64,000 nucleotides of DNA, from the NCBI GenBank assembly GCA_002104905.1, contig MCFE01000391.1:18821-82820 (forward strand), in the 5' to 3' direction. The notes beneath the pieces were generated by a model, which was not told the DNA's origin, made no database searches, and was given only the letters and a program-made list of their open reading frames with translations. The position numbers and the translations under genes are program-made. Of this stretch, positions 11,701 through 64,000 are shown in pieces; position 1 is the stretch's first letter; each line of letters opens with the position of its first letter. Source of the stretch: Basidiobolus meristosporus CBS 931.73. Its lineage: Eukaryota; Fungi; Basidiobolomycota.

Positions 11701-11839
11701 TTTCTCCTGGCAGCATCTTTGTAGTAAGGGATTTTTGTCTCAGATACATTTTCTTAGCAGCTGAACATGACTGGTAGGTGTCTTCTAATGCCTTCCAGGC
11801 ATTCTTTACCATTTTTGCTCTTGAGCATTGAATTAGCAT
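8735..11839 (-). mobile_element. Ty1/copia internal region (gag-PR-IN-RT), broken frames, no RNase H, no LTRs
   Basis: CNYCKKKGHTSDQC knuckle, WYIDSGASQH, LWHRRFG, HSDLC/FIDAYTRYTW integrase, and RT motifs KARLVAKGYSQ, MDIKTAFLNG, LKKSLYGLKQ. Copia domain order (IN before RT). Confidence 0.95.
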
Positions 11840-28100: not shown

Positions 28101-31100
28101 AGATCAAGTATCTTGCTATCCAACTGATCAGTCTCAAGACTCAACCCCCTCAGATAGACATTCATCAGATGGTTGTATCCTAGATGTTTCAAGGACCCAA
28201 GTATTCCCATATGAATATGAGTGTTGGACTCTGGGTTTTCAATGAACATCTCCTCGCGTACGCTCAAACTCTTCAACCATTGCCCTTCATGCTCATACCT
28301 TTTTATAAACGAGGTGGCTTGCGAAGGCAATTTCACCCCATAAAATCCGTCTGGCTCATCCTGATACTTGTAAGCGCTGAGCAAGAGTTGGTTGACTTTA
28401 GAGAAGTCGAAGTTGCTGGGGAGTTCGTGGGCTTTCTGCACATCATACCAAACCTCCACAAAGATCAAGGAGATCGAGAAATCCCCGCATTTCTGAGCAA
28501 TCTCGGCCATGACCAGATAATCCAAATCAAGCCAAAAATTGTCTTCAAAAGGGTTTCGGCCGTTTGGGATCTTTTGCTTACGCAGGAATACCACAATATC
28601 GAGGATCGTTACAAGCGTTGGCGTCATGTATTTATCAGGCTGACGGGCAATGTCCATGATCTTGTCTGAGAGTAAGGTCCGTACGCGCCCAGGCCCTTCC
28701 TTGAGCTCATCTTCTAAAATGTTGAAGATCAAGTATGGAATGATATTCTCCGAGAAATCGTGGTTATTCTCACACACTGAACCAAGCTGCACCAAAAACT
28801 CGTCTTGAACTTCATGGGATATCAAAGAGCACGCTAAATGCTTCACCCACTTCTGGTGATTTCCAAGTGCTAGCTCCCAGAGCTTGGAGTCCTCTAAGCC
28901 AGGGTAGATGCCCGCGATTTGTCGGAACAGTTTAGATTTTCGATTGCTCCTCGGATAGAAGCTCTCTAACATCCGACGGTTATATTCGCTTACCAATGGG
29001 AAGCAGCTGATACCGGAAGAGGTGGCTAGAATATGCTTTAACGTTTTTGCCGTTATTTGGACCGTTACTATATCCACGTTGGTCAGGAAATCCGAGAGGC
29101 AGGAGAGGATAGCTGCTTTGATTCGAAGTTGAATGTCAGAGTCTTCTTTAGCCATAATCTGCTTTGCAAGATATCGGATACGATTCATGTTTGTCTGAAG
29201 GGCATAGCCTTGCACATTATATGAGGCCAACTGCCCGATACACCTACAACTTTCCAGGAGTATCTGGTTTTGATATACAGAGGGGAACGCACTAGAGCAG
29301 ACCTTAAACAGGGCCGATATCAAGGATTGTATGATGTTCGTATATTCAGGGCGTCTCAGGGTTGTGGGAGCCGTCTTCTGGAGAATCCGATGAATGTGTT
29401 TCAAACCAGCGATAAGTGGAGCTGGATAGGCACATTGCCAGATATTCTGGTACATTTGGAGCAACTGCAAGTTGCTGAAATCAAGGTAGTATCCCTCAGA
29501 GAGCTTCGATAAATCCTTGAATATTTCCTCCTCCGGAAAAGGATAGAGGGTGTTTTCTGAGCTTTCGGTATAAGCAAGGCCACATTGAACATTTGACACC
29601 ATGCAGCGATGCAAGAAAGCGACTAGTGACTCGACACGACTCGATATATCATAGCGGTCTTGGCACTCAGAGCATCTTGGTTCAGAAGTGCTATGGTACA
29701 TATCGTAGCAGCATTGCGTCAACGAGTTAATAAGCGTGAATAGGTTCAGTGTTAATTCTGGTGACTTGAACGCAAGGACCTGATCTCGAACAAAGACCAG
29801 TATCTCAAACGAGTCGTCATACAACTCCGGTGTTCTGATAAGATTGGAGAAAGTTAGAGTCAGCTCTCGCAGAATGAGCGGTTGCTGGATATGCTCGGGA
29901 GTAAGAGATATTAAAAGGCGATAGGCGCCCAAAAGCCTTTTCTTCTCCAGAACCATCCTAGTGGATTCCACAAATCGACGCAACCCCAGTAAAATTTTAT
30001 ACATACGCGCAGGCGTGAGTATTGCTTGGACCTCAACCTTGAGCAAATCTGCGATATAGGAGATGCAGTAATATATCGTGACCTCGTCACGATTGAGGAA
30101 ACACGGCTCCAACTGGCAATGGGGCCCTTTAGGCTTGAGTTTCTTGCATCGCATCAAAATCTCGTTGGACTTCAGGATGCTGGATGCCGGTAGATCATCG
30201 TTCACAGTGGATAGCAGGTTCAGTATCATCGCCTCGATATTGCGACGGAACTCGAAATTAAATTGCTCAGGCTCAAATACCTGTCGTAGATAACCATCTA
30301 GCACATTCGTGAACGACTCTGGATTTTCAGAATACAAAAGTGGGAGGATGTATCCGAATATTCTATCAAAGCAGCTTCTCAAAAGATCGGGTATCTCAAC
30401 CGCCAACGTAGTTGCAATAAGTGAGATGGCATCTCGATCATTCACAAGAACAAGTTGAGCCGTAAGTTCATCGCGGACATCGCTGCAGAAATCTCTGAAT
30501 GATTCGTACCCAAAGATGTTGAAGGGAAATTCGAGGATGTCATTGGATTTAACCCACTTCGAAAGGATAAAGGGTAGGAACTCGAAAAGCACGTTCCTTG
30601 CTTTCGGGCCATAGTTTAGTTCGCATGCGATAGAGCTTAGCGTCCGAGCTATTACTTGGCAATATTGACTATTGTGAGCCCCAGCACCACCTTCAATCAG
30701 ATGATGGATCCCAGTTTTGCGTATTTCTGGGCAAATCGTACACACGTTGGACACCGTAATAAGTCTGGTAAGGCCATGCTCATACAACTTGGGGTGAGAG
30801 AGAACATGCGATTTGACGGTCTCGAAAAGCTTTGAAGAATTTTGTTGGCGGCTTCTTTCTAAGGTGGCAGCGTGATCAGTATACTGTGGCGATAGCTCTT
30901 TGCCCTGGAAGAACCAAGTAATCTTCCGAGAAATGTAAACTCGAACGGTAAAGTCTTGATCCTCAAGCATTTGGAAAACTAAACCTCGAGGCGTGTATCC
31001 ATCTTGGATGAGCAATTCGTTGCTTCCGTTTGATTCTAGGTAACTCATGGCAAACCCACATAATTCTAATCGCACTTTCCACCAGAGCATACTCTTTCTC

Positions 31101-34100
31101 CACTGACGAACAAACCATCCGAAGAACTTTTCTACGCTTCTAACTATCGTCTCATCCTCCAACTGCGGATTCTCTTCCACAAGACTCATACTGACGACCA
31201 TAGCTGGCGTCAAAAGTCGTAAGCATCTTAAAACAGCTATGTAGGCGAGTTGATCTTTCTGGTATCGTAGGTCAACCAAAACTTTGCTGCATAATTCGCA
31301 CAGATCGCAAACAAGACTCTTGCTTATCGCTCTGGAAATAGTGGACGGCTTCAAGCGTTCTAGCCAGTCGCATACCAAAGAGATGATCTCTACTGGATCT
31401 TTGTCGTCTGAATCCGTCACAACAATATGCTGCAAGTGTTTAAGAATCATATCGTGAACTGGCTGCCACGGGCTAGCATGCTGGGAGAACAAAGGGGGGT
31501 CACTTTGAATACGTACGAAGAGCGACTCTTGAATATGCAATAATATCTGGAAAGCATCCAGAAGTAGCCTTCTCCCAAGAGGGATTGGACGTGTACCATA
31601 ATATTCAAGTGATGGGTTTGTAGTCACCAAGGTAGGGCCAGACTTAGTGGAGCTACTAGTGGAGTTCACAAACTCATCCTCAAAATCCATGGTGTTTGAT
31701 TTCTTTGTGAATCCCTTGTGAGACTTGGCATGGCCGGCAGTTTCCTCAAGTAAAGAGATTTCAACAAGACAATTACAAATAAACTGTAGCAGGGTGGGAT
31801 TCATCAACTGCAATTTCCACAGGGATCCATCAGCCCTGAGAGTTGAGGGCGGCATTAATTCAGGTATCACCACTTGTTGCCAAACTTGTCGTTCAGCGTA
31901 GGCCTCGATGTTTTTAACTTCGAAATGGGTCTTAAGAGTCTGAGTGATTGCCGTTAGATAGTGTGGCTGGCTGGATAACTGTCGAACTGCTTGATGAAGC
32001 AGGCTCCACAACGCATTCATCTCATCCATCAAGGGATCCTGTAACAGCAGCTCATACGTCGTTACCTCCATGTTGACTAGGATCTTCGCGATCCGATTGA
32101 AAAGAGTCGAAATTTGAATGCTAAACATAAGGCTTTGGCACAACTGAGCGAGCAAAGTGGCTTCGAAGGTTTCCGGATCTCTGATCAAGCGAGAGAATCG
32201 TCTGATCCGGCTATGGGTGGTAGAGAAAGTCTTAGCAAACAATGCACAGAGTTCGTGACATAACTTCGGCCCGAATTCTGAGCGATGGCTACTGGCATCT
32301 TTATCGCTTACGTCAGAGGTGTTTTTAGATCTTTGCGTGCCAGTCACGTTCAACGGCCCACTATCGAGAAGCTCCCGCAGAGCAGTAACGTCTCGTAAAC
32401 GTTTCTCAAACAAGATATCGGTAGATGCTATCTCTTGTAGTTGGCCAATTCTATAGTAACCCTGGATCTTGATGCGATTCTCAATCAGAATTTCTTGGTT
32501 TATGTCCCGGTCCGACTCGTGCTCTTCGGGAACTTCGCGGTCGGAAAGATATCCTTGTCGTTCAGCATGAGCCTGCAAAAACGGCACTATCAAGGCCTCC
32601 ACGCACATCTCGATATCATTGATTGGCGCGGCCTGGAACGATTGAGTACTATCCTCTGAAGATTGGACGTCAGATACGAATCTACGTTGTTGCACCATGT
32701 GAGTAAAGATCCACTTAAGCCAGTCGGCATCTCTAGTTTGCTTCGAAGATGAAGCATCTAGGCTATGAGAAAATATATCAAACGAAACTATAGCGGAATA
32801 ATTGGTCAATAGAACTATGAGATTATCCGTGAAGTTCCGCTGCTTCGTTGGTCGCTGATCTTCGATTTCAAGCCCACCTTCTGCCAGGTTCTGACTCAGA
32901 AGCAGAGACACGAGTTTAGATATCTCCTTCCGCGAAGAAGTCATTTCCACGCTGGGTACAAGCTGACTGATCATCAAGGTATTCAAGATTAAGACTGCGG
33001 CTCCACCGACATACAACGAGGTGACCTTTTGTAATGCCTGATGCCACACTCGAATCCACATTGATGAGGAGCTTGATGAGGCTTCGTATAGTTCGAGTAC
33101 GTTACATGGCTTTTGAGTTGTTTCCTGAGATGATGCCGGCAGTTTTCGGCATACCCACTTGGAGAATGCCATAGAAGATTCGGCGAAGGTCTTTAGGCAG
33201 AGTAAGCTCCAGAATAAGGTAGTGTGATCTTCGCTAGACAGCAACTCAATCACAAGCTCCGGAATGGAATGTATATTCCGACTTGAGCAAGCATTTGCGA
33301 GATGTCCCAAAAGAGACGATGGGATGGAGATGATTCTATGAGGATACTTTTCGTTAATTGACATGAAAACCTGAAGTAGTGAGACTAATAGCCCGCTATT
33401 ATGTGACGATGTATGCGACAGAGTCTTGATGACTTCGTACAACACGGGAAATGTGTCTGATACAGGTGCATCACTTTTGGCCCGCTTATTTGATGAAAAC
33501 TCTTCATGCAGAGCCCGTTTTCCGCTGGACGTTGGGACAGTTGTTGAGAATATTGAGGCAGAATGTAGCTTTTGCTGTGTCTTGCTATCAGACCCCCGGT
33601 CAGAGAGCCATCTCCATTGCTCCACCAAGATGAGCTGATTGAAGACATCTGCGATAAAATCCATGCACACCCAACGCCAGCCTACCTGGTCGTCAGTGCT
33701 CTTCATAGCCCAGGTATATACTTGAGGCTCGCTAGGGCGACTCCTAAATGGAGTATGAGTACCGAAAGTTAACCCCAAACTCTCATTGGTCTGAGCAACA
33801 GGATGGGATTTATTCCCGGTGGATGGCGCTGTCGAGAGTAAAGAAGTGAAGTTGAAAGAGTACGCGCGGCCAAGCAGCGGGTTGACCGATTCGTTTCTGC
33901 TTTTCGCGAGATCGTCTTGAATGCATCTATAAACATCATACAGTCTATCGAGTGTCTCCTCGTTTAACGAATCAACACTCAAATGCTCTCCGCCTAGGGT
34001 GTGAGGGTCCACGCAGGTGTAGATTTGATTAAACTGGAGACGAGTGAAGCATATAAGCTCCATCTTGACAGCAAGGGTCTTCGTACTCCACAGCGAAACA

Positions 34101-35161
34101 ATAATGTTGTGGAAGAGCAAAGAGAATTCACGAGACACATCGTTGTCGTTTAGGGTTAACTCGCATATCACGCTGTTTACGGCCGAAAGAATCAATGGCG
34201 TGGTATTGGTTTCACGTGGATAACAATAGAAGTAAGTTAAGAACAGGCACAAGATGTTAAACCCATAATCCCGGACCCAATCATACGTGGATGCGACCAG
34301 CAAACAAATGATCTTTGCAACCTCAACCTCGGCTAGATTGGTGCCTAATTGCTGTGTGCGAGCTTTGGTTCGATACCTCGACTGAGGCTTCTTCGGAGAA
34401 ATATTAGAATACGCGCTAAACATGCCTTTCAAAGCGGTGTTCGGCTTTGAGTAATCAGAAGAATGGGGCGATTCTATATCTGATTCAACGTCGGTTTCGT
34501 CCGAGCTGAAATCAATGGGCTCCGATCTTAGAGGTCGAGAATGGTTTGCTTTCGCTGTCTGTGTTGAAGTAAGGTCTTTTTCGCCAATAAGGGTACTGCC
34601 AAACAAATAAATGAGGTTGTCCCACAATGTTCTAGAGAGTTTGTCGCGATATGGTCTATGCACGAGGATATAATTAGCCAATGCTTTTGAGTAATCTAAT
34701 AAAAATGGAGTAAAAATATCCAGATTTTGTCTGGTTGCATCGGGAGCAAACGAAGAGTTTTTGAATGGTTGCTCATCCGAAAAGCTCTCTCTGTTAAGCC
34801 ACAGCGTGGCGATTATATGCGAATATACGTCACGAATGATTCGGTAGAGTGGCTGAGCAGAATTACTATGACAAACTTTTAAAATCCACCGGAAATCCGC
34901 GCCTAATTGTTTGAATCTAGTGGGTACCGAAGCAGTACTTAACGGGGCTGAGCCGAGTTTTTTTAGAAAATCACGCTGCTCCAGCTCGACTAAACCCATG
35001 TACTCCAGAACCACATGTTCCCAAGTCTCTTGGTCTATATGAGGTAGATTCGATTCGATGGAAAGGAGCTCCTTCAATTGATTAACGCTTTCGGTTCGCT
35101 TTTTGATGACTCGGGAGCCAAAACCAGTACAGCAATGAGAAATGCTACTTGCCAAGGACAT
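25146..35161 (-). CDS. TEL1: ATM/Tel1 PIKK serine/threonine kinase, 3319 aa, 2 exons
   Basis: N-terminal TAN-like motif, FAT region, kinase motifs KGNDDLRQDAVMEQVF and GLGDRHAQNILID...HIDLG, FATC ending LYPGWSPFL. One intron 25877-25932 restores the frame (9960 nt CDS). Confidence 0.97.
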
Positions 35162-43457: not shown

Positions 43458-44225
43458 TTATTTGTCAGCAATCTTCTTGGTACCGCGAAGCAAACCGGTA
43501 CGACGAGCGGCGATAAGACCGACCTTTTGACCAGCAGACGAGTCACGGGCAACAGTAGAAGCATGACCGATGTGTTGGTGATTACCACCACCGTGGGGAT
43601 GGTCAACGGGGTTCATAGCAACACCACGAGTCTTAGGCCAGCAGTTACGCTTGACTCTGTACTTGTGGTAGGCACGACCAGCCTTAAGCAAAGGTTTATC
43701 GATACGACCACCACCAGCGACGATACCAATAGTAGCACGGCAGGTAGATTGGATGACCTTCTTGGAGCCAGAAGGAAGCTTCACTCTAGTCTTTCCGTCA
43801 TCGTGGTTGTGGGAAATGATGGTGGCATAGTTACCAGAGGCACGAGCAATAGCACCACGATCACCAACAGACTCTTCGATGTTACAGATGATGGTACCCT
43901 CGGGCATGGCAGAAAGGGGAAGAACGTTGCCAATAGTCAAAGCGGCCTTCTTACCACAGTAAACAAATTGACCGGTGTACATGCCTTCAGTAGCAATGAA
44001 GGTTTGTGTGTGGGTCTTGTATCTATAAGGATCACGGAATTGAACTTTGGCAAGAGGGGCGCCACGTCCGGGATCGTGAATGATTTCCTTGACGATACCG
44101 CGAATGTAACCATTGCGTTCAGCAAAATCTAAGGGACGGAGCTGTGCGGCGCCTTTTCTAAGTCTGGTGTGGGACTTGAAAATGCCACCAGGACCCTTTC
44201 TCTGAGCACGAATAACACGACCCAT
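43458..44225 (-). CDS. RPL2: 60S ribosomal protein uL2 (L2/L8), 255 aa
   Basis: [48 protein letters not shown]. Confidence 0.99.
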
Positions 44226-52692: not shown

Positions 52693-55600
52693 GATATCTT
52701 CACGAGAGAGCCGATATCGCGAGCCAGGCAGGGTGTGGTGAGGATCTGAAGAGAGGGGTACGAGTAGGAGTACAGTTGAATGCTCAGAGTCGAGGCGAGA
52801 ATTGCAACGCTTGGCAATTCGGAGTCAAATGTGGTTGGTTGAAAGAATATCCGATCTTTACGAAGAGTTTAGGTAGGTGTATACGATAGACGAGAAAATA
52901 CTGAGGCATGTTGAGGGGAGCACGCCGATATTTATATTGGATCTCCGCAGAAATCCTCGATTGCTGGTCGTGGTCACGATGCTGGAAAGTGGGTGACGAG
53001 CAGAGAAGATTACGTTGGTGATTGCGGGGTTGCGGACACCAGCCTGAGCCCACCCCGATATGTTGTCACTCCGTCCCGAGGATCTTTGTCTTGATTGTTC
53101 ACATCCAGAAATAGATGAATGATCCGAAACAGTATCCAATCCTACCAATGATCGGAAGCACCAATGGGGGCCGAGGAAGGTGTGGTATAAGGTTTCAGTC
53201 ATGTGCGAGGAGCTGCCTGTTGGCGGGCTCATCGCGCCGGGCTCCCTCGCACTCACGGAAGATGCATGGCTTTGTTTCTTTCCAAACACCATTTGATGTT
53301 TCTAAGACGCATCTACTTCCTGGTAGCAACCACCTACAAGGGGGCGTCGATGAGTTCAAAACTGAGCGAATCGATGTGCCGCCAGCCTATCTGTGGTTCG
53401 CGCCCAGTCGGTGGGCAGCCCCTTGGGAATTATTTACCCACCCCCTTCACCTCAGTGATGGCCGTGGAGTCATGAGAATGTTCCCATGTATTATGATGCA
53501 TCGTGGTGCTGTGATAAACTTGAAAGGATGCCGATTCCTTTCGGGAGGTTTTACTCCCCAACGGATTGCCAAATCAGATATTGCCTGGCTGGCCAGTCCC
53601 AAAGACAGAGTTTGTGCACCATGCTTACTCCACCAAAGAAATCGGAGTCAATTCACCGAGGCGAATGCTTCCTCTTTGATAGGCTGGAATACTGCCCCAA
53701 CTGGGTCAGGGAGAAACGGGGATGGCCGCCTGGTCTGATTGATGGTGTGTTCAACTGATGGTTGTATATTCCAAAAAATCGACACAACTCATAACAATGG
53801 GACAAGAAATGTCACAATTACCACCATTCTTCAGTCATCATTGGCGCCTCCTTAAACTCTTCTGGGCACGATTGCATCTGACCCTGTGTTTCGCCTAGAT
53901 CGCCCGTTTCCATCGGTGCTCGATAGACTTTCGATTTGAGTAATGCATTAGCCAAGAGTCAGCTGCTGAACCCGGTTCATCTAATGCGCAGCCAGAAGTG
54001 TGATTCCAGCAAGGATGTGAGCGAATCATCGTGTCTCTTGATGTGGTTGCGGCAGCAGCATCGATTTGTACCATAGACCTGCTTTGTTCAATGTGTACCA
54101 GGATTGCCATGTCGTCTCAAGGCCATGGACCGCAGCCACCACAAAGAGTGACTGCTTTCCACTGCCGGTTGAGCTGTGTTCATTCAAAATAGAGATTGAT
54201 GGTTGGTTAGAGGGGTGGGGTTTACTAGACAGGATGATTTAACCTACAGAGATTTAAACTGAACGCGGGAATCGATAACACCACATCTGCATGTTGCCTA
54301 GTAATCTGTGGCCTTAAATCTCTGAATTCCATATAGAGTGACTGCGTCATGTCAGGCAACCTTGTTCACTTTGCTAAATCTACATGAAGCTTGAATGGGG
54401 ATGCAAATATTTGGGCTACTCATTCATCGCCCAGTTTAGTAAAGCATCTACAGCAATAGCTCTCGGCTTCCGCCTAGGAAACTATGCTTGTGGTGATGGG
54501 GAATTTAATGATATGTTGGTGTTTAATAATATTATTTATATATATGAACTGTCAATGTCAGTACCTTGCTTTGAAGTACTCTCAGGTATAACCGATAAAC
54601 TTTCACAAAGTAATTTAACCTTGTATATCTTGTAAATGCCTTGTTTAACATCTAGTTCTTCATGTATTTGGATTTCATATTAGGCCATATCTTTGATGTT
54701 GACTTGGATTTGATGCCTTCATATCCTCCGAGTAATCTTAAGGAAGTTTAGAAACGTCGAGTATATGATGCTCGAAGGTATCCTGAACTTCTCATATATC
54801 TTACTGCACCCTTCAAAAGTACACTTGCCTATTTATTTTGTAAGATTCGACAAATTCTATACCAACAAGTTCTTTTTTACTACTGGAAAACAAACCAAGT
54901 CAACATGTCGGATAAGGCCTTCAGATGAATCGCAAAAAGCCTTAAGCTTCTTGATGGCTTGTTAAATTTGCCGAATACGCAAACTTCTACAAATCTCTAA
55001 AATAAGTGTATTTACACTGCTTCAACTCAATAAGGGAACAAGTAAAAGTTACACTTTGATCTTATAAATCCCATTCACTTCGCATAACGTCTAGAGTTTT
55101 TTAGTGATAATGTATAAATCTGCGTTAATTAATATTGCGTTTACTCACATAATTCACCAAGTAGCCGGTATGCGGCCATACCTTTAATCGTAATGGCACA
55201 CCATACGAATTAACATATATTTGTGAGGCGGTAGAAAGACTTCCGTGCCACCACTTTCATGCAAAGAAGCCATTAGCATTGCGGCCATCTCATATTCGGC
55301 ATCCGATATATAGACCATCTAGCCATCCCCATTCTAATGGAGTAAGCCTCGATTAGCCTTCATTAGTCCACATTGATACATGCCTTCCAGATGTCATCCT
55401 TAATATGTATATATATATATATCCATCGATTAATGTAACCACACTGGACAAACCCAACATAAATCCCAAGTGTATTGTTAGAAAGAGGAGAGTTGAGTGA
55501 TGCATGATAGATGTATATCATGGTTGATTTTTATATCTATCTTCAGAAACAGAGACGTTTGCTTTGGTTTAGTAGAGGAGTAGCTAAGGGATATACAGAG

Positions 55601-56508
55601 AAGCAAGGTATTGAGTTGCGGAAGTTCTCACAAAAGTGCTGTTTCAAAGTCTCATGGTTTTGGTGGATATATTCCATACTATTCCCAATGTATATCAAAT
55701 TACGCGGCGAACTAAGCATGAATATAAAGCTAATCTCTCCAGCTGTCACAATATGCGTAGCCATTAAGCATCATTCACGTGATGGACTAGGAGTCACAAA
55801 TTCGAACTAGTTGAAACGTAGCACTCACAAAGAAAATGCCGTGTAATCGGCATCTCTTATAAAGAGTTGACTGACAACCACCTATTGCTCCTTTGAAAGC
55901 AGAGAACAATCCCCGATAGCAATATAGGAAACTTGAAGGCTGCAATTGGGAAGCATTCCTATTAGTGTCATGCAGTAAGATGATATCCCTTCCGTAGAAA
56001 ACAAGGGAATGGAGTGAACGTCATATATAAAACAACCCTCCATCGGTAAGATATTTTCAGAAAACGTAAGTATTCTATAGCTTAGTGCATAATCAAATTC
56101 AAACTCAACGAAGCATTCAGAATTTTGGTGATTGATGTCTATTAGCTCAGGGTTCCTTGCTGCGTTGATAATTTGCTTCTCTATCCTAGCCATAGCATTA
56201 TTTTGTTGGGCGGTAATTCCTTTACGTAAATTCTTGTATTGCTTTATTGATTAATAATGTGGCCTCATCCTAAAAGAAAGGTGAAGAGCTCTTCTTTTAA
56301 TCTGAATTAGTGACAACCTCCTGATCATTGTGCCTAAATGTTTAGGCTCTCCATTGACAACATAAATACTCCCTTAATCTTTGGTATAATTATGTGGTGC
56401 TTCTGCCCTTATTTTCATTTGCTCACTGTGTTGTATGGCAAATGGTAGGTATCCTATGCTAATTTAGGGTGTAGGTGTTATAGTAAGGGCTAGGAAAAGG
56501 TTAGAAGA

Positions 56509-56577
56509 GCAGGGGGTCTGGGGGACGCAGTCCCCTAGAGAATAAAAAAGCAGGGGGTTTGGGGGATGCAATCCCCC
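56509..56577 (+). repeat. Duplicated GC-rich hairpin motif (possible Helitron/rolling-circle terminus relic)
   Basis: GCAGGGGGTCTGGGGGACGCAGTCCCC and GCAGGGGGTTTGGGGGATGCAATCCCC, 41 bp apart. The first is followed by CTAG. Confidence 0.55.
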
Positions 56578-57093
56578 ATACTGCTCCCATACTCTTTAAA
56601 TTCCTGTTGGATTACTTTTCTCTCATTCTTGGTTCTGGTCCCTTAGGGTTGGAATTCCTCCTCCTAACCCTTATCACCCTAACCATAAATATTTTTACCC
56701 TACAACTGGCACATTGTCTGCTCTTATAGTGGGCATGTCTAGGCTGATATTTGTCTCCCTACACATTCTCTATGCTCTGTATAGGTCTTGATGATTATTT
56801 ATTTAATAAAATGTTACTTTTGATGCTATAAATAATAATATATGGGAATCATCCCAATCTGGCCAGAATCTCATATTTTAATAAGCTTTGGGCAACATAA
56901 ATTGCGCGGCCCTAATATGATAAAAAAATTTATGGCCATTGCAAATTTTCTGTAACCCGAGTGCTTTTACTAAATTCAAAGTGTATCCCAAGTTCAATAC
57001 ATTTTATAGCTATAATAGACACATCATTTGACACCATCGCAACTACTACATGTGTTCCATGTGCACATGTATCCTGCGGGAATTGTAAAAACC

Positions 57094-57736
57094 TAGCCGT
57101 GCAGTACAAAAGTGCTTTTATTTTTCATCATGCTAGTTTTCATGAGTTCCTAACGCACTTCCAAAGTACGCAGTAACCATACCCCAACAGGTTTTAAGAA
57201 TGCCCACTGGCTATGCTTACTTGTGTCTAGCGGGAGCCATCAGTCATCAGCCGCGCGGTACTGAAATGCTTTTATTTTTCATCATGCTAGTTTTGCATGA
57301 ATTCATAGCACACTTTTATAGTGCGCGGTAACCATACCCCAACAGGTTTTAATGATACTCACTTGCTATGTTTACTTGTGTCTAGCAGGAGTCATCAATT
57401 ATAAGCCGTGCGGTAATAAAGTGCTTTTATTCTTCATCATGCTAGTTTTACATGAGTCCCTAACACAATTTTATAGTGCGTGGTAACTATACCCCAACAG
57501 GTTTTAATGATACCCACTTGCTATGTTTACTTGTGTCTAGCGGGAGTCATCAATCATTAGCCGCGCGGTAGTAAAGTGCTTTTATTTTTCATCACAATAG
57601 TTTTACATGAGTCCCTAACACACTTTTATAATGCGCGGTAACCATTCCCCAACAGGTTTTAATGATACCCACTTGCTATGTTTACTTGTGTCTAGCGGGA
57701 GTCATCAATCATCAGCCACGCAGTAATAAAATGCTT
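57094..57736. repeat. Tandem satellite, ~155-bp unit, ~4.2 copies
   Basis: The anchor GCCRYGCRGTA recurs at 57096, 57250, 57405, 57560 and 57715 (spacing 154, 155, 155, 155). Confidence 0.97.
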
Positions 57737-58550
57737 AGACTACTTTGGGGAACGGTTCTAAGCAAACATTAAGCGCTGCTTATGGTGATACAGAAAACAA
57801 CACTCTGGCACCTCAGTTGGCGCATTGGTTGTCAAGATTACCAAGAAAAATTGGAAGAAACGTTTCAAGGAACATGGGTTGGCAAGGAGTGCACCAAGGA
57901 ATCAGGTGGTGGATGCGGAGGTGGAAGTAGTGGTAGGGATTTAATGCAAACTCAAATAAACTGGTATATACATACCATTTGGCTGGATAACCCCCCCCTT
58001 GGCTATATCTGACACAATGTTCTTGGCTCCTGGAGGGAAAACAAACACTAGTTAGCAGTATTTCAACAATCCTGCCCTGCCTCTACCATTCTGCGGTGTA
58101 TTTTCTTCCTGATTTCTTTAGTAGGTAATTTCAGCAGCAATGAGGGGGGGGAAGATTTGCATTGTATTTGCCATCAGCGTACATGATGTAATGCCCATGT
58201 CAGCAGGGTGTATTCAAGCTTTGCAATGTGAAGCTAATTTTGCAAGACCATCTGCATTGGTTCTACTGTGAAGTTGGCGCTCCATTTCTGATTTGCCATT
58301 TGCTTAATTTCATGCTTATGGCACTATGGCACTGAATTAGCTGTCATATTGCCAATAAAATTGCATCCCTACCCCTGCTGAAACATGTTACGTGACTGCA
58401 TGACTATGTGACTACGTGCTAAATCTACCCTTTGGCCTTCCACATGGATTATGAGAACCTTTCCAGCAAAAGCTCTGAGAGATGGTTACTTTGCGGTGTG
58501 TGCATACTACTTTCAAGTACGTGGACTAGCACTGAGGTCTACACAATTAT

Positions 58551-58885
58551 TTGTCAGCACTGTGTTTGCACATGTGCGATAACAAGCACATTTTATTGAA
58601 CTTGGACGCTTTTGCTCTAACAATTGTCAGCACTGTGTTTGCACATGTGCAACAGCAAGCACTTACATTGGGCTTGTCTTGGACGCAATTTGCTCTAATT
58701 GTTGTGGACTTTGGTGAGGCCTACGTTTAGAAGGGGTGCGGAGCACCACTTTGGCTAGTTTACGCTTTGTCAGCACTGTGTTAGCACATGTGCAACAGCA
58801 AGCACCAGTTCTTGGGCTTGTAAGCGTTTCTCTTAAGGAGAGGCTGGTCATTGTGTGTAGCCTGCTGTTAGCATACGTGCAAAAT
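58551..58885. repeat. Local ~40-bp repeat, 3 copies plus a partial
   Basis: TTGTCAGCACTGTGTTWGCACATGTGC..CAAGCAC at ~58551, ~58624 and ~58767; partial at ~58866. Confidence 0.88.
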
Positions 58886-59106
58886 ACGGCCTTGACTCGC
58901 TTTGTGTAATCACTATTCTTCCTGGTCCTATGTCCAGGAAAGGTAGCAAGCATTCTCCACAGCAGCAGTGCTTGGAACAGTAGTTCTGGTTGTTGTTTGA
59001 GTTGGTGTGTTTCAGCCGCAAAGCCAAATGGCTGCTAATCTGACAGAAGGGTAATCTTCGAAGAAGTACTTTGGTGCCAAGTGCTCTCTTTTTTTGTTGA
59101 TGTGAT

Positions 59107-59124
59107 TTAGGGTTAGGGTTAGGG
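59107..59124 (+). repeat. (TTAGGG)3 telomeric repeat fused to the LINE 3' end
   Basis: TTAGGGTTAGGGTTAGGG directly followed by GGGGAGACAGTCACC, the LINE terminus. Confidence 0.9.
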
Positions 59125-62100
59125 GGGGAGACAGTCACCAACAAGTGAAATCTTTATTTCAGTTGAAACAAAGAAGCCAGCGCTACTGTTGTAGCTTTGA
59201 TACAAGAGTGTGTAGCTGAGGGGAATTTGTAGGTAAGTTAATAAGAAGTGATGATAGTTCTTCAGTGCGCAAGACACTGTTCAGTGGGAAGGGGGGTAGC
59301 AAGAGAGGTAAGTATGACTTGTGAACAACATTAATGAGGGGAATGTGATAAGGATTGATATTCATCATAAAGGGAGTGTGCTGCTGCAGATATTGCTGCC
59401 AAAGGTCTGTCAAGTACTTCAGGTAGGCCAGCTTGGGTTTTTCTGACTGCAGAATAAATTGAGCAAACTTCTTGACTTCAGGATCTCCAAGTATAGCTCT
59501 CCAGCAGGAGCCAGGTGTTGTGTGGTGTGTTCTCTTCCAGGCCTTAATCAGTGGGTTGTTGCAGTTGTGAAGTCTGAGGTATAATCTGGTTCTAAGGTAG
59601 AGAAGTCTGATCTTATAGGGCATAAAGCCCAAAAGCACCAAGAATAGCATGTCTGTAGGGGCATTCAGGCAAATGAGGCACCAAGGAGGTAATGCACCAT
59701 ACTGCAAACTTGTCAAGCTTCAGTGCAGTCTCTAGAAGTAAGAGAGAGAAGTGGTAAGCCAAATTCCAGGACAGGGAAGACAAACTGCTTGAGTAGAAGG
59801 AGGCAGCTGGGAGCTGAAGTTGTAGGAGGAGTAACAGCCAGTAGCTTGTGGAGTGCCTGTCTTGCCAGGATAATTCTCTTCTTCAGGTGTGCTCCAGAGT
59901 CTAGTCCAGTAGGAAGGAAAGGAAAGCCAAGATATGTAGCAGAAACCTGAGCAGGTAGAGTGGTGTTCTCCAAGTTGATGGGAGAGCCCAAAGGTACTGT
60001 CTTTGCAATGGAAAGCTGGAGATTATTCTTCTGCAGATACTGGTGGATGGTGCTGGGAGTCTTGTTCGCACATTGGAGGAGGATATTCTGATGTCATCAG
60101 CAAAGAGAGTAACCAGGCAGTCAGCTGAGAGTCTTGGGAAATCATTCAGGAAGATGGCAAACAGTATAGGACCAAGCACAGAGCCTTGAACCACTCCATT
60201 AGGAACTGAGAACACAGCTGATTGCTCACTTGGGTGCAGAATTCTTGCTTGTGGATCCAGAAACAGAGACCTGACAAGGAGGGTGAGAGAGGTACTGGAG
60301 AAGCATTGCAACTTGGACCAAAGCAGATTTCTGTCAACTGAATCAAAGGCCTTGGTAATATCAAACAGAACTGAGGGATACTTGCACTGGAGAGAGTGAT
60401 CTTGGCTAAGTATGAATGCATATTCCAAGGAGAGGCCAGGAACAAAGCCAAACTGTGCAGGATGAAACTTGAGGGAGTCAGAGTAGAGCTCCTGAGCAAG
60501 CAGAAGCTCAAACACCTTTCTGCAGGTGGGCAGCAGAGATATTGGCCTATAGGAGCTAGGATCCAGGTGCTTTCCTTTACCCTTGTACAGTGGCAGAACA
60601 TTTGCAAAGGACCATTCCTCAGGAGTAGAAAGCTGGGCTGAGCATTGCTGAAACAGTGGAAGCAGAAGTGCAGACATGGCCTTGGTACTAGTCTTCAGAA
60701 GCTCATAGGAGATTGTGTCCACACCTGGAGCAGTAGAGTTGGGAAGCCTCTTGAGCACATTATGGATTCTCCCTTGATCAAGTGCAAGTGGGATGGGCAG
60801 AGTCTTGAAGTCAGGATGAAAGCCAGGAGTTGAGTACTGCTTTGTAGAGAAGAAGATGTTAGCCAGCTGTTCTGTTGAAGGTAACTTCCTGAAAGAGGGC
60901 CTCATTGCCCTGTAGAGTCTTGATACTGTTCTTGTTATAGAGTTGGCAGATTGCAGAGGCAAGGAACTCATAATATGATCCCAGAGCTGAGTATGTAGAG
61001 TGTGGTGAATTGCCTTGGAGTGGTGTATTGCTGTCAGGAGGAGTTTCTCTGTTTTTGGGTTAGGGAAACTCAGGTAGCTTTGTTGCAGGGCTGAAACAAT
61101 GGATTCCCATTTTCTTGAGGTAACAGCAGTAGTCTTGCATGGCAGTGAGAAGGAGGCAGACACCTGAATCAGGTGCTTCACAAAGAGCCAGGCATAGTTG
61201 AGATCATCTGGCAGAGAAAGTAGCAAACTGGCAAGCTTCAAGAAGTTCCCAAAGTCTTTCTTCTGATTCTTGGTAGCTTTGTGGGTGAGCACAGTAAGTT
61301 TTGGCAGCTTCTTCTTCACAACTGGTTGCATAGAAAGGGACCAGGCTGGGTGGTCAGAGGCTCTCAAGGATCCTAGCTCAGCTCCAGAGAATTGCTTAAC
61401 TTCATTCACAAAGTAGAGGGCAGCAGCAGAAGGGCAGATCCAGTCAACACATCTTTTCTCAGATTGAGCACCTAGTGCTAGCAGATGGCTTTCTCTCAGG
61501 AAGTTCAGTAGGAATGTAGACCTTGGCTTCATTCTTGCAGTCAGAGTAGTCTTGTTCTCAGGATGGGGAATGTTGAGATCTCCAAGCAAGATAACAGGTG
61601 TTGATATAGATTGCTGGTATTGCTGAGCTTTCTGGCATATAACTTGCACTTCCTGAAGGGCAAGACTTGGAGGCAGATAGCAGAGCACCAGACTGATAGT
61701 TGGCAACTGGACAGCAGCACAGTAAGGGGAGTAAAGAGGAACACAGAGCTGAGGAGTATTGATGGTAGAAGAGATGAAGCAGATAGAGGAGGTATTCTTT
61801 GTTCTAGGAGTAGAAAAGCAATATAGATTAGTCAAAAGTATAGAGGGTAGCTGGACATCAATCAAACACAGGAGGGAAAATCTTGAAAGAAGTCTCTTTA
61901 GAGTTGGTCTTGATGGCTGTATGCTGTTGCAGTTAAGCAACAGAACTTCAGGTAGTCAGGCAGAGGTTGTAGCTTCTTCAGAGGCAGCATTGACAATGTG
62001 ACCTGCAGAGTCCCAGAGCTCTTCAAATGGTGCATCACTTAAGTCAGCAAGGAGGGAAATGGCATGGTTCTTGAGGAAGTATGCCACATCATAGGAGGGG

Positions 62101-62446
62101 GCTTGTCTCTTGATGGCAGCAAAGAAAGACAGAATGGCAACATGGGCTGGAGGCTTGTTGAACAGTAGAGAGTCAGAGGATTCAGATTCTTCAGGCACTA
62201 TCTTGAAGTCAGTTTTCAGCCAGTTAAGGTTCTTCTCCACAAAGGCAACAAATGGGTCAGCAATGTTTTGGTCTAGGATAACCTCCAGAATCTTCCTTTT
62301 CTCCAGGCCAGGTTGACAATTCTTGAGAGCTGAATATTGCATGCCTTGAGTGCTCTCCTGATGTTGGAAATGGAGTCCAGGAACTTGCTTCAAGTACACC
62401 ACAATCCAGGTAGAAGCTGTGTAGTTGCTGGGCTTGTAAGTCCTTC
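59125..62446 (-). mobile_element. Non-LTR retrotransposon (APE endonuclease + RT) copy A, 5'-truncated in the upstream ORF, with frameshifts
   Basis: APE motifs LNCNS, CYLPP, GDLN, VDWI, SDH. RT motifs APGVD, YRPISLL, QFGF, FDITKAFDSVDR, GVVQGSVLGP, FADD. No RNase H or CCHC seen. Upstream ORF at 61956-62402. Confidence 0.97.
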
Positions 62447-62470
62447 TTAGGGGAGGAAGTCACCTTAGGG

Positions 62471-64000
62471 GGGAGACAGTCACCAACAGGTGAAATCTTT
62501 ATTTCAGTTGAAACAAAGAAGCCAGCGCTACTGTTGTAGCTTTGATACAAGAGTGTGGAGCTGAGGGGAATTTGTAGGTAAGTTAATAAGAAGTGATGAT
62601 AGTTCTTCAGTGCTCAAGACACTGTTCAGTGGGAAGGGGGGTAGCAAGAGAGGTAAGAATGACTTGTGAACAACATTAATAAGGGGAATGTGATAAGGAT
62701 TGATATTCATCATAAAGGGAGTGTGCTGCTGCAGATATTGCTGCCAAAGGTCTGTCAAGTACTTCAGGTAGGCCAGCTTGGGTTTTTCTGACTGCAGAAT
62801 ATAGTGAGCAAACTTCTTGACTTCAGGATCTCCAAGTATAGTTCTCCAGCAGGAGCTAGGTGTTGTGTGGTGTGTTCTCTTCCAGGCCTTAATCAGTGGG
62901 TTGTTGCAGTTGTGAAGTCTGAGGTATAATCTGGTTCTAAGGTAGAGAAGTCTGATCTTATAGGGCATAAACCCAAAAGCACCAAGAATAGCATGTCTGT
63001 AGGGGACATTCAGGCAAATGAGGCACCAAGGAGGTAATGCACCATACTGCAAACTTGTCAAGCTTAGTGCAGTCTCTAGAAGTAAGAGAGAGAAGTGGTA
63101 AGCCAAATTCCAGGACAGGGAAGACAAACTGCTTGAGTAGAAGGAGGCAGCTGGGAGCTGAAGTTGTAGGAGGAGTAACAGCCAGTAGCTTGTGGAGTGC
63201 CTGTCTTGCCAGGATAATTCTCTTCTTCAGGTGTGCTCCAGAGTCTAGTCCAGTAGGAAGGAAAGGAAAGCCAAGATATGTAGCAGAAACCTGAGCAGGT
63301 AGAGTGGAGTTCTCCAAGTTGATGGGAGAGCCCAAAGGTACTGTCTTTGCAATGGAAAGCTGGAGATTATTCTTCTGCAGATACTGGTGGATGGTCTGGG
63401 AGTCTTGTCGCACATTGGAGGAGGATATTCTGATGTCATCAGCAAAGAGAGTGACCAGGCAGTCAGCTGAGAGTCTTGGGAAATCATTCAGGAAGATGGC
63501 AAACAGTATAGGACCAAGCACAGAGCCTTGAACCACTCCATTAGGAACTGAGAACACAGCTGATTGCTCACTTGGGTGCAGAATTCTTGCTTGTGGATCC
63601 AGAAACAGAGACCTGACAAGGAGGGTGAGAGAGGTACTGGAGAAGCATTGCAACTTGGACCAAAGCAGATTTCTGTCAACTGAATCAAAGGCCTTAGTAA
63701 TATCAAACAGAACAGAGGGATACTTGCACTGGAGAGAGTGATCTTGGCTAAGTATGACTGCATATTCCAAGGAGAGGCCAGGAACAAAGCCAAACTGTGC
63801 AGGATGAAACTTGAGGGAGTCAGAGTAGAGCTCCTGAGCAAGCAGAAGCTCAAACACCTTTCTGCAGGTGGGCAGCAGAGATATTGGCCTGTAGGAGCTA
63901 GGATCCAGGTGCTTTCCTTTACCCTTGTACAGTGGCAGAACATTTGCAAAGGACCATTCCTCAGGAGTAGAAAGCTGGGCTGAGCATTGCTGAAACAGTG
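62471..64000 (-). mobile_element. Same LINE, copy B (3' 1.5 kb), head-to-tail with copy A, continues beyond the window
   Basis: 62474-64000 is near-identical to 59129-60658; RT ORF 62958-63857. Confidence 0.97.

What the first reader, a model, noticed from the sequence alone, without database searches (positions are those of the whole stretch)
59101..64000. Candidate telomere-primed LINE array: APE-RT elements stacked head-to-tail, each 3' end fused to TTAGGG
Seen: both copies begin on the plus strand as TTAGGG-G(3-4)-AGACAGTCACC; copy A has three perfect repeats and copy B has one. The period is ~3345 bp, the copies are near-identical, and they lie just distal of a satellite at the end of the gene-rich zone. 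Established: the G-strand runs 5'->3' toward a chromosome end, so the end would lie to the right and the elements would point 3'-end inward. That is the polarity of Drosophila HeT-A/TART, Bombyx TRAS and endonuclease-less Athena/Coprina Penelope-like elements. Inference: the RNA's 3' CCCCCC(UAA) anneals to an exposed TTAGGG 3'-OH, which primes reverse transcription, so the element extends or caps chromosome ends. The fungal telomeric retroelements I know are RLE-type (Magnaporthe MoTeR) or Penelope-like (Coprina). An APE-type, tail-less one may be undescribed, but I cannot verify novelty.
Basis: partly seen in the sequence, partly recalled or inferred. Interest (0 to 1): 0.92.

Follow-up and report, generated by a model that had tools for sequence, protein, structure and literature searches.

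The report
Telomere-targeting LINE stack at chromosome end
The last 5 kb of this Basidiobolus contig is a one-way stack of broken copies of a jumping gene that joins only to the chromosome-cap repeat TTAGGG. This habit is known from insects, a lizard and some other fungi, but I found no report of it for this enzyme type in a fungus.

Summary
On the + strand, (TTAGGG)3+GGGG at 59107-59128 and TTAGGG+GGG at 62465-62473 each abut the 3' end of a minus-strand LINE. A 15-nt stub of a third copy lies between them.

The elements are APE+RT LINEs. The endonuclease folds as APE1/TRAS1-EN/L1-EN, keeps its catalytic residues and is under purifying selection.

One correction: the 3345-bp "period" is not the unit length. 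Copy A is cut short inside ORF1, and full-length elements are about 4.5-5 kb. Both window copies carry frameshifts.

The window is the terminal 64 kb of contig MCFE01000391.1 of Basidiobolus meristosporus CBS 931.73, so the stack sits at the contig end with the predicted polarity. Two other contig ends carry same-sense stacks, and one ends in a real (TTAGGG)33 telomere. Five related lineages from other samples show the same tail-less 3' end joined to CCCTAA units.

This is a telomere-targeted LINE at real chromosome ends, but priming without the endonuclease is not shown. I put an endonuclease nick (TRAS-like) at about 0.5 and end-priming at about 0.35.

It is a new variant of a known kind. 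This scan had already flagged the same arrays on many other pieces of this genome.

The parts
57059..57736 (.). 155-bp satellite. It is part of a subtelomeric repeat block that recurs inside LINE stacks on other contig ends.
   Evidence: families D1, D5. The same satellite and its neighbouring block appear in L011 6183-7060 and at the ctg243 junction, in the same orientation relative to the end.
59107..59124 (+). Basal telomere tract, (TTAGGG)3. It marks the boundary between subtelomeric DNA and the LINE stack.
59125..62446 (-). LINE copy A, 3322 bp. It is 5'-truncated inside ORF1, has two frameshifts and has no poly(A).
59125..59185 (-). 3' UTR of copy A: an A/U-rich hairpin, a CACC/GGUG hairpin, then an unpaired run of 7 C (4 of its own plus the 3 shared with the last telomere unit).
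   Evidence: The sequence is conserved in 8 element types, but covariation is weak.
61296..61955 (-). APE-type endonuclease domain of ORF2.
   Evidence: Invariant N8, D33, Y93, D126, N128, D171 and S200-D201-H202. dN/dS 0.13. AF2 pLDDT 83. Foldseek: APE1 2.8e-10, TRAS1 EN 2.4e-9, L1 EN 2.7e-9.
60057..60560 (-). Reverse transcriptase core (FADD motif). It is interrupted just downstream by a frameshift.
   Evidence: Pfam RVT_1 1.3e-21. The family profile hits L1 ORF2p at 4e-21 and R2 at 1e-7.
61956..62402 (-). C-terminal 148 aa of ORF1. It ends in a single in-frame UGA (61956-61958) directly before ORF2.
61057..61065 (+). Internal telomere-like 9-mer GGGTTAGGG (sense CCCTAACCC), inside the invariant FPNP codons of ORF2.
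62447..62464 (+). One telomere unit (TTAGGGG) plus an 11-nt stub. The stub matches the extreme 3' end of a sister subfamily.
62465..62473 (+). One telomere unit (TTAGGG) plus GGG, joined to the 3' end of copy B.
62474..64000 (-). LINE copy B, the 3' 1.53 kb. It runs off the end of the contig and has one frameshift.
   Evidence: Contig end established.

Best explanation
The region is the proximal part of a stack of telomere-targeted non-LTR retrotransposons at a chromosome end of Basidiobolus meristosporus.

The element. It is about 4.5-5 kb. It encodes a coiled-coil ORF1, a single in-frame UGA, then an ORF2 of about 920 aa with an N-terminal APE-type endonuclease, a reverse transcriptase and a C-terminal domain that matches no Pfam family. 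Its 3' UTR has two conserved hairpin-forming segments and ends in an unpaired run of 4-10 C instead of poly(A).

Proposed mechanism. The C-run pairs with the GGG-3' of the telomeric G strand, and that 3'-OH primes reverse transcription (target-primed reverse transcription). Every copy therefore lies with its sense strand continuous with the CCCTAA strand, its 3' end pointing inward and its 5' end toward the chromosome tip. Most copies are 5'-truncated.

What is shown: the anatomy, the polarity, the terminal position, the telomere-unit junctions, family-wide conservation of these features, and an endonuclease under purifying selection.

What is inferred: the pairing step and the source of the primer. 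My preferred version, at about 0.5, is that the element's own endonuclease nicks the G strand between TTAGGG units, as TRAS1 does in TTAGG repeats. Telomerase then maintains the terminal tract. The identity statement alone (a telomere-targeted APE LINE stack at a true chromosome end) I hold at about 0.9.
For: - APE+RT architecture.
- APE fold with TRAS1 EN and L1 EN among the structural matches.
- Catalytic residues invariant in six lineages, and dN/dS of 0.10-0.37 (0.13 for the closest pair).
- Window position: window coordinate + 18820 = MCFE01000391.1 coordinate, and window 64000 = contig end 82820.
- Contig 243 ends in (CCCTAA)33, followed by two same-sense blocks of elements within about 25 kb of the end (about 9 kb next to the telomere and about 5 kb further in), separated by about 11.5 kb of other DNA. 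Contig 90 has at least 6 same-sense elements in its last 9 kb. No 3' end of opposite sense is found.
- Junction phase: in 15 motif-detected junctions the C-run is always followed by TAA. In 12 of them the tract ends after TAA (3, 9 or 15 nt). This fits fixed cleavage positions on both strands.
- Assembled read contigs show at least 13 different internal positions of the element joined to the TTAGGG that precedes a 3' end. This means serial, independently truncated insertions across the genome.
- Five related lineages (48-83% aa identity) from other samples have the same 3' end joined to TAA(CCC)(TAA). One of them is a collapsed head-to-tail tandem of full-length copies joined by a single TAACCC.
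- Precedent: APE-type LINEs found in telomerase-made repeats (TRAS, SART, Tx1-1_ACar) insert into those repeats (PMC10088271, PMC7265360). That they act through sequence-specific endonucleases is from my own knowledge of TRAS1 and SART1.
Against: - No biochemical or expression data. No RNA run is available, and every copy I inspected is defective.
- The residue equivalent to the metal-binding Glu of APE enzymes is Asp in all six lineages, so activity is unproven.
- Internal telomere tracts are 0-2.5 units, but the terminal tract is 33 units. Random nicking within a 33-unit tract would be expected to leave many long internal tracts.
- Two junctions have no telomere unit at all (L011 7896, L013 8765). 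A TTAGGG-specific nick does not explain them.
- The bases of the stacks sit at different truncation points of one shared subtelomeric repeat, with at most 2.5 units. This looks like healing of eroded ends.
- The telomeric Drosophila elements TART and TAHRE also keep an APE domain (my own knowledge), so conservation alone does not prove use of a nick.
Confidence: 0.5

Rival explanations
1. End-primed addition without the endonuclease. When a telomere erodes to 0-3 units or a chromosome breaks, the exposed G-strand 3'-OH pairs with the RNA's terminal C-run and primes reverse transcription. Telomerase then re-caps the new end. The stack would be a record of successive healed ends.
For: - All internal tracts are 0-2.5 units against 33 at the tip.
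- Stack bases lie at three or more different truncation points of one shared subtelomeric repeat, with 0.5-2.5 units.
- Read contigs show a relative of the window's flank joined to TTAGGG plus a 3' end at 58897 instead of 59106.
- Two zero-unit junctions exist.
- Precedents are L1 insertions at dysfunctional telomeres (cited in PMC10088271), endonuclease-less Penelope-like elements, and HeT-A/TART.
Against: - The endonuclease is under purifying selection with intact catalytic residues. Obligate end-adders such as Athena and Coprina lack an endonuclease.
- Short interstitial tracts are also the rule in MoTeR/FoTeR arrays. There they are attributed to breakage and healing at long interstitial tracts, which is a survivorship effect (PMC8381367, PMC12857005).
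- Zero-unit junctions can arise by template switching within a single reverse-transcription event.
Confidence: 0.35
2. The stacks grow mainly by recombination rather than by serial retrotransposition. An eroded end invades an interstitial telomere unit between copies and copies the distal units (telomere attrition-induced replication or break-induced replication), or unequal crossing-over occurs.
For: - This mechanism is documented for MoTeR arrays in TERT knock-outs (PMC8381367).
- A subtelomeric block is embedded between LINE copies on contigs 90 and 243, which shows that ends exchange sequence.
- Copies A and B are 98.7% identical.
Against: - Neighbouring copies have different 5' truncation points, and at least 13 distinct truncation joints are seen in read contigs. 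Replicative amplification would give identical units.
- Different subfamilies and very short stubs are interleaved.
Confidence: 0.08
3. An ordinary dispersed LINE whose RNA simply ends in a fixed CCCTAA-like tail. The telomere-like units would come with the element and say nothing about the target.
For: A minimal TAA follows the C-run in 15 of 17 junctions. Part of the tract could therefore be templated by the RNA.
Against: - The number of units varies from 0 to 2.5.
- Downstream neighbours are almost always another element of the same community, or the subtelomere boundary.
- All copies share one orientation.
- All three loci are at contig ends, one with a real telomere.
Confidence: 0.03
4. 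Assembly artefact: mis-joined repeat reads at a contig end.
For: The contig ends inside copy B, and repeats are hard to assemble.
Against: - The same junction types appear in independent read-derived contigs of this organism.
- They also appear on two other contigs.
- They also appear in contigs from at least 7 unrelated samples.
Confidence: 0.01

Closest known systems
TRAS1 / SART1 (R1-clade LINEs of Bombyx and other insects)
   Same: They are APE-type LINEs found only in telomerase-made repeats, in a fixed orientation, and they stack proximal to a terminal repeat tract in a host with telomeric repeats. TRAS has the same polarity as here, with its sense strand continuous with the C-rich strand. 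The TRAS1 endonuclease (1wdu) is among the structural matches.
   Different: They have poly(A) tails, while this element ends in a C-run. Their target is TTAGG in insects, here it is TTAGGG in a fungus. R1-clade membership was not tested here. The sequence is very distant, with no endonuclease hit by sequence in the PDB.
Tx1-1_ACar (Tx1-clade LINE in the telomeric repeats of the anole lizard)
   Same: It is listed among elements that insert into telomeric tandem repeats (PMC10088271). From my own knowledge it is APE-type and its host's repeat is TTAGGG.
   Different: It is a vertebrate element. I had no sequence to compare, so the clade relationship is untested.
MoTeR1/2, FoTeR, Cnl1 (fungal telomeric LINEs of the CRE clade)
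   Same: They have fungal hosts with telomerase. They form head-to-tail arrays at chromosome ends with very short interstitial TTAGGG tracts, frequent truncation and no poly(A) (PMC12857005, PMC8381367).
   Different: They carry a restriction-enzyme-like endonuclease, which is used in the FoTeR phylogeny (PMC12857005). This element has an N-terminal APE domain and no such domain.
HeT-A / TART / TAHRE (Drosophila)
   Same: They form one-way head-to-tail stacks at the extreme chromosome end, 3' end inward. They are a community of autonomous and ORF1-only partners, and an ORF1-only unit is present here at L013 3251-4215. From my own knowledge, TART and TAHRE retain APE domains.
   Different: Drosophila has lost telomerase and has no short repeats between elements. 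Here a 33-unit telomerase-type cap and inter-element units are present. The Drosophila elements have poly(A) tails.
Athena / Coprina (endonuclease-less Penelope-like elements)
   Same: They are telomere-associated, their 3' ends abut telomere repeats, and they are thought to prime on exposed G-strand ends.
   Different: They have no endonuclease and a Penelope-type RT. Here the endonuclease is present and conserved, and the RT is LINE-type.

Membership tests
APE-type non-LTR retrotransposon (LINE) | An endonuclease with the APE/exonuclease III fold lies N-terminal to the RT in one ORF. | tested here: met
   Pfam matches are weak (1e-3 to 3e-6). AF2 pLDDT 83 and pTM 0.84. Foldseek: APE1 2.8e-10, TRAS1 EN 2.4e-9, L1 EN 2.7e-9. 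N, D, Y, D-x-N, D and S-D-H positions are invariant in six lineages.
APE-type non-LTR retrotransposon (LINE) | LINE-type reverse transcriptase with a YxDD/FADD motif. | tested here: met
   RVT_1 1.3e-21 to 3.7e-27. The family profile hits L1 ORF2p at 4e-21 and R2 at 1e-7. A-D-D is invariant.
APE-type non-LTR retrotransposon (LINE) | Variable 5' truncation of copies. | tested here: met
   At least 13 different truncation joints in read contigs. Truncated copies of 37 nt to 3.3 kb on three contig ends.
Telomeric-repeat-specific LINE (TRAS/SART kind) | Copies lie in telomeric repeats in one fixed orientation. | tested here: met
   17 junctions on three contig ends are all same-sense and none is antisense. 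Relatives from other samples behave the same way.
Telomeric-repeat-specific LINE (TRAS/SART kind) | The endonuclease cleaves the telomeric repeat at a defined position. | not testable with these tools
   Only indirect evidence: the junction phase is fixed (C-run then TAA in 15 of 15 motif-detected junctions, and the tract ends after TAA in 12 of 15).
Telomeric-repeat-specific LINE (TRAS/SART kind) | Membership of the R1 clade, with a poly(A) tail. | tested here: not met
   No poly(A). The 3' end is a C-run. The clade was not resolved because no named reference sequences were available. The family is isolated: only about 6 clusters score above 280 bits, and the next tier is generic LINE ORF2 at 273 bits or less.
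MoTeR/FoTeR/Cnl1 (CRE clade) | A restriction-enzyme-like endonuclease domain, and a CRE-clade RT. | tested here: not met
   The endonuclease is N-terminal and APE-type. The C-terminal 250 aa match no Pfam domain. The REL-domain nature of MoTeR/FoTeR/Cnl1 is from PMC12857005.
Endonuclease-less Penelope-like elements (Athena/Coprina) | No endonuclease, and a Penelope/TERT-like RT. | tested here: not met
   The endonuclease is present and under purifying selection. The RT is nearest to L1 ORF2p.
Drosophila-type telomeric retrotransposon array (HTT) | The elements themselves form the chromosome terminus in place of telomerase repeats. | tested here: not met
   Contig 243 ends in 33 perfect CCCTAA units distal to the stack.
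Drosophila-type telomeric retrotransposon array (HTT) | A one-way head-to-tail stack with 3' ends inward at the extreme chromosome end. | tested here: met

The most novel reading that the evidence does not exclude
The LINE, its ORF1-only partner and its SINE form a retroelement community that heals critically short or broken chromosome ends in a fungus that still has telomerase. The G-strand end would prime directly on the RNA's C-run, with the endonuclease serving only to trim or process the end. This would be a living intermediate between parasitic telomere-repeat targeting (TRAS/SART) and full takeover of end maintenance (Drosophila HeT-A/TART).
Probability: 0.3. Interest if true: 0.8.

Novelty: new variant of a known kind. 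Interest (0 to 1): 0.6.

Why it matters
Telomere-targeting retrotransposons have arisen several times. They are the main natural model for how a selfish element can come to share, or take over, chromosome-end maintenance.

The known fungal cases use a restriction-like endonuclease (MoTeR, FoTeR, Cnl1) or none (Coprina). The known APE-type cases are in insects and a lizard. An APE-type, tail-less family with a telomere-complementary 3' end, in an early-diverging fungus that keeps a normal telomerase-type cap, adds an independent origin.

It also offers a culturable system. Whether such elements need their endonuclease or use the natural chromosome end could be tested directly. The stacks also explain why many contigs of this assembly break at chromosome ends.

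Tried and rejected
I could not run the whole-genome census of 3' ends or search for TERT.
- No RNA runs are available, and only assembled read contigs could be laid. Expression, RNA 3' ends and copy number could not be measured.
- Cnl1 of Cryptococcus came to mind as a possible known APE-type fungal telomeric LINE. I rejected it because it groups with the REL-domain CRE clade (PMC12857005).
- Clade assignment failed. The PDB profile search gives only L1 ORF2p ahead of R2 and no endonuclease hit by sequence. The nearest outgroups carry only generic Exo_endo_phos/RVT_1 domains and uninformative names. The Atlas gives generic arthropod and chordate LINE clusters.
- L003 first looked like an insertion in non-telomeric DNA. 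Comparison with L010 showed its flanks are the element's own 5' UTR, so it is a collapsed head-to-tail tandem.
- The short 3' hairpin is invariant and shows almost no covariation: 1 of 5 pairs has a compensatory change and 2 sequences break that pair. Structure is therefore not demonstrated.
- The Tel1 ORF is not on record as a called gene. The ribosomal protein uL2 gene located the window instead.
- The search for homologous proteins did not return this species' own proteins. The representative search did.
- ARAGORN finds no tRNA in the SINE-bearing stretch L013 2300-9400. Rfam finds nothing in 54000-64000.
- Literature searches found no paper on Basidiobolus telomeric retroelements.

Full report
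**1. The observation.**
The + strand reads (TTAGGG)3 at 59107-59124, GGGG at 59125-59128, then AGACAGTCACC. Further on it reads TTAGGG at 62465-62470, GGG, then the same 11-mer. Perfect 12-mers of the repeat occur only at 59107-59124. The chance expectation for matches with up to one mismatch is 0.15 per window, and 0 of 100 shuffles reach the observed five. The two copies share 98.7% identity over 1535 nt at a spacing of 3342-3345 bp, and no other copy lies in the window. A 155-bp satellite lies at 57059-57736. Between the copies there is also TTAGGGG (62447-62453) followed by an 11-nt piece. With its C-run this piece reads as the last 15 nt of a sister subfamily's 3' end.

**2. What the elements are.**
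The coding strand is the minus strand. A 679-aa ORF (59901-61940) contains RVT_1 (1.3e-21) and weak Exo_endo_phos matches.

- *Relatives.* A protein search found five close relatives, P0001-P0005, at 47-83% BLAST identity. After them comes a wide gap to generic LINE ORF2 proteins at E of about 1e-24. An exhaustive profile search confirmed the isolation: only about six clusters score above 280 bits.
- *Architecture.* The relatives' contigs show a 5' UTR of up to about 700 nt. ORF1 is 437-500 aa with coiled-coil-like matches only. ORF2 is about 920 aa, made of APE, RT and a C-terminal 250 aa that match no Pfam domain.
- *ORF1-ORF2 junction.* In all six lineages ORF1 and ORF2 share one frame, separated by a single UGA in the conserved context GCC-UGA-CUN.
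- *Endonuclease.* Positions equivalent to the catalytic N, Y, D-x-N, D and S-D-H of APE enzymes are invariant. The metal-binding Glu position is an invariant Asp. dN/dS is 0.13 for window versus L008 and 0.10-0.37 for the other measurable pairs.
- *Endonuclease fold.* An AlphaFold model (pLDDT 83, pTM 0.84) matches human APE1 at 2.8e-10, the TRAS1 endonuclease at 2.4e-9 and the L1 endonuclease at 2.7e-9.
- *RT.* The profile matches L1 ORF2p at 4e-21 and R2 at 1e-7.

The element is therefore an APE-type LINE whose endonuclease is under selection. I could not assign a clade.

**3. The 3345-bp spacing is not the unit.**
Copy A aligns to its closest relative only from position 993 of L008, inside ORF1. 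It also aligns to a longer copy in the same genome, L013 5435-8763, which continues upstream to about 4216. This gives a full length of about 4.55 kb in this genome and about 5.06 kb in the P0003 lineage. The 148-aa "upstream ORF" is the C-terminus of ORF1. Copy A has two frameshifts and copy B has one. Contigs assembled from reads lack one base at the same places, so less damaged copies exist elsewhere.

**4. The 3' end.**
Fourteen 3' ends in the window and in contigs from other samples, representing at least seven element types, share one plan. The conserved sequence AAATAAAGATT comes first, then a CACC/4-5-nt loop/GGTG hairpin, then 7-9 nt, then a run of 4-9 C (up to 10 in a copy on contig 243). 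TAA, TAACCC, TAACCCTAA or longer follows directly, and then the next element. There is no poly(A). Folding predicts two adjacent hairpins and an unpaired C-run. The short stem is invariant, so covariation neither supports nor contradicts it.

**5. Where the locus is.**
Two family members are annotated proteins of Basidiobolus meristosporus CBS 931.73, assembly GCA_002104905.1. The window's ribosomal protein uL2 gene located the window. L017 (MCFE01000391.1, 52278-73045) is 100% identical to window 33458-54225. Window coordinate + 18820 therefore gives the record coordinate, and window 64000 is base 82820, the last base of the contig.

**6. Sister loci in the same assembly.**
- *Contig 90.* The last 9 kb of MCFE01000090.1 holds at least six same-sense elements with their 5' ends toward the contig end.
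- *Contig 243.* MCFE01000243.1 ends in 33 perfect CCCTAA units. Directly proximal lie a 37-nt 3'-UTR stub, TAACCCTAA, and a 2.1-kb copy 98.5% identical to copy A. Further in lie more LINE copies, an ORF1-only unit and a SINE-like unit. A second block lies 20.7-25.5 kb from the end. All are in the same sense.
- *Junction statistics.* Over the three ends, 15 motif-detected junctions have tracts of 3, 4, 6, 9, 12 or 15 nt. Two further junctions have no unit at all. No 3' end of opposite sense was found.
- *Read contigs.* Contigs from the organism's own runs show at least 13 different internal positions of the element joined to the TTAGGG that precedes a 3' end, with 2-7 extra telomere-like letters between. 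The element is covered far more deeply than the flank. That depth figure is not a copy number.

**7. Mechanism.**
The shown facts are the polarity, the terminal position, the unit-phase junctions and the conserved endonuclease. The step in which the RNA's C-run pairs with GGG-3' of the G strand is inferred. The source of the primer is not resolved.

For an endonuclease nick:
- The endonuclease is under purifying selection.
- The phase is fixed at both junctions.
- There is the precedent of TRAS, SART and Tx1-1_ACar (PMC10088271, PMC7265360).

For priming on eroded ends:
- Internal tracts are 0-2.5 units against 33 at the tip.
- Stack bases lie at three or more different truncation points of one shared subtelomeric block.
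- A read contig joins the flank to a unit at 58897 rather than 59106.
- Two junctions have no unit.

The short-tract argument is weakened by the MoTeR literature. There, long interstitial telomere tracts are rare because they break and heal (PMC8381367), and FoTeR arrays also show single-unit tracts (PMC12857005). I put the nick model at about 0.5, end-priming at about 0.35, recombination as the main driver at about 0.08, and the remaining explanations at about 0.04.

**8. Comparison and novelty.**
Elements that insert in telomerase-made repeats are known: TRAS/SART, Tx1-1_ACar, Zepp, GilM/GilT and MoTeR (PMC10088271). The fungal ones described use a restriction-like endonuclease (PMC12857005) or none. 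I found no paper on Basidiobolus telomeric retroelements. This is a new variant of a known kind. The new features are the APE-type enzyme in a fungus, a tail-less telomere-complementary 3' end, and partner elements.

The same arrays had already been flagged by this scan on dozens of other pieces of this genome. Two follow-ups reached a similar reading. Those notes gave me the organism lead, which I then confirmed independently.

**9. Limits.**
- I could not run a genome-wide census or a TERT search.
- I had no RNA data.
- I could not assign a clade.
- No intact copy was seen.

Noticed in passing
window 61956-61958 (minus strand); also L001 2112, L003 2198, L010 1666, L008 1449, L007 905: ORF1 and ORF2 are in one frame, separated by a single UGA in the context GCC-UGA-CU(A/C/T). 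This holds in all six lineages, which suggests programmed readthrough as the way ORF2 is expressed.
   Followed up: partly
window 61057-61065 (+ strand GGGTTAGGG): A telomere-like 9-mer sits in the invariant FPNP codons of ORF2. It is identical at synonymous positions in lineages only 48-65% alike in protein. In L002 (5636) a 5'-truncated copy begins exactly at this motif, merged with the preceding element's telomere unit.
   Followed up: partly
window 56300-57736; L011 6183-7060; contig 243 junction (L012 about 13102-13140): The 155-bp satellite and the block next to it form a subtelomeric repeat shared by several chromosome ends, in the same orientation relative to the tip. It is cut at different points and capped by 0.5-2.5 telomere units plus a LINE. 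On contigs 90 and 243 it has LINE copies on both sides.
   Followed up: partly
L011 7896-7899 and L013 8763-8768: Two junctions have the C-run joined directly to the next element with no telomere unit. This may reflect template switching between RNAs during one reverse-transcription event.
   Followed up: no
L013 3251-4215 and L013 8769-9289: An ORF1-only unit of about 960 nt and a SINE-like unit of about 520 nt share the LINE's 3'-end plan.
   Followed up: partly
L013 4335-4357: The 5' UTR of the longest copy in this genome carries a 20-nt insertion, relative to lineage L010, that contains two CCCTAA units.
   Followed up: no
window 25877-35161 (minus strand): An uninterrupted 3094-aa ORF for a Tel1/ATM kinase (TAN, FAT and PI3/4-kinase domains) lies 24 kb from the stack. 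The best named relatives are only 33-36% identical (chytrids, animals).
   Followed up: partly
window 43458-44225 (minus strand); L014-L017: The ribosomal protein uL2 gene encodes an identical 255-aa protein at five places in the assembly, at about 89% DNA identity and with different neighbours. L014 also carries seven tandem PEPCK genes. This indicates extensive paralogy in the genome.
   Followed up: no
L011 10790-18266: Five tandem genes with a CHAP domain, a peptidase domain that in my knowledge is mainly bacterial, lie directly proximal to the stack on contig 90.
   Followed up: no
window 11192-11839 (minus strand): A copia-type gag ORF (Retrotran_gag_2, 2.6e-26) shows an LTR retrotransposon in the gene-rich part of the window.
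   Followed up: no
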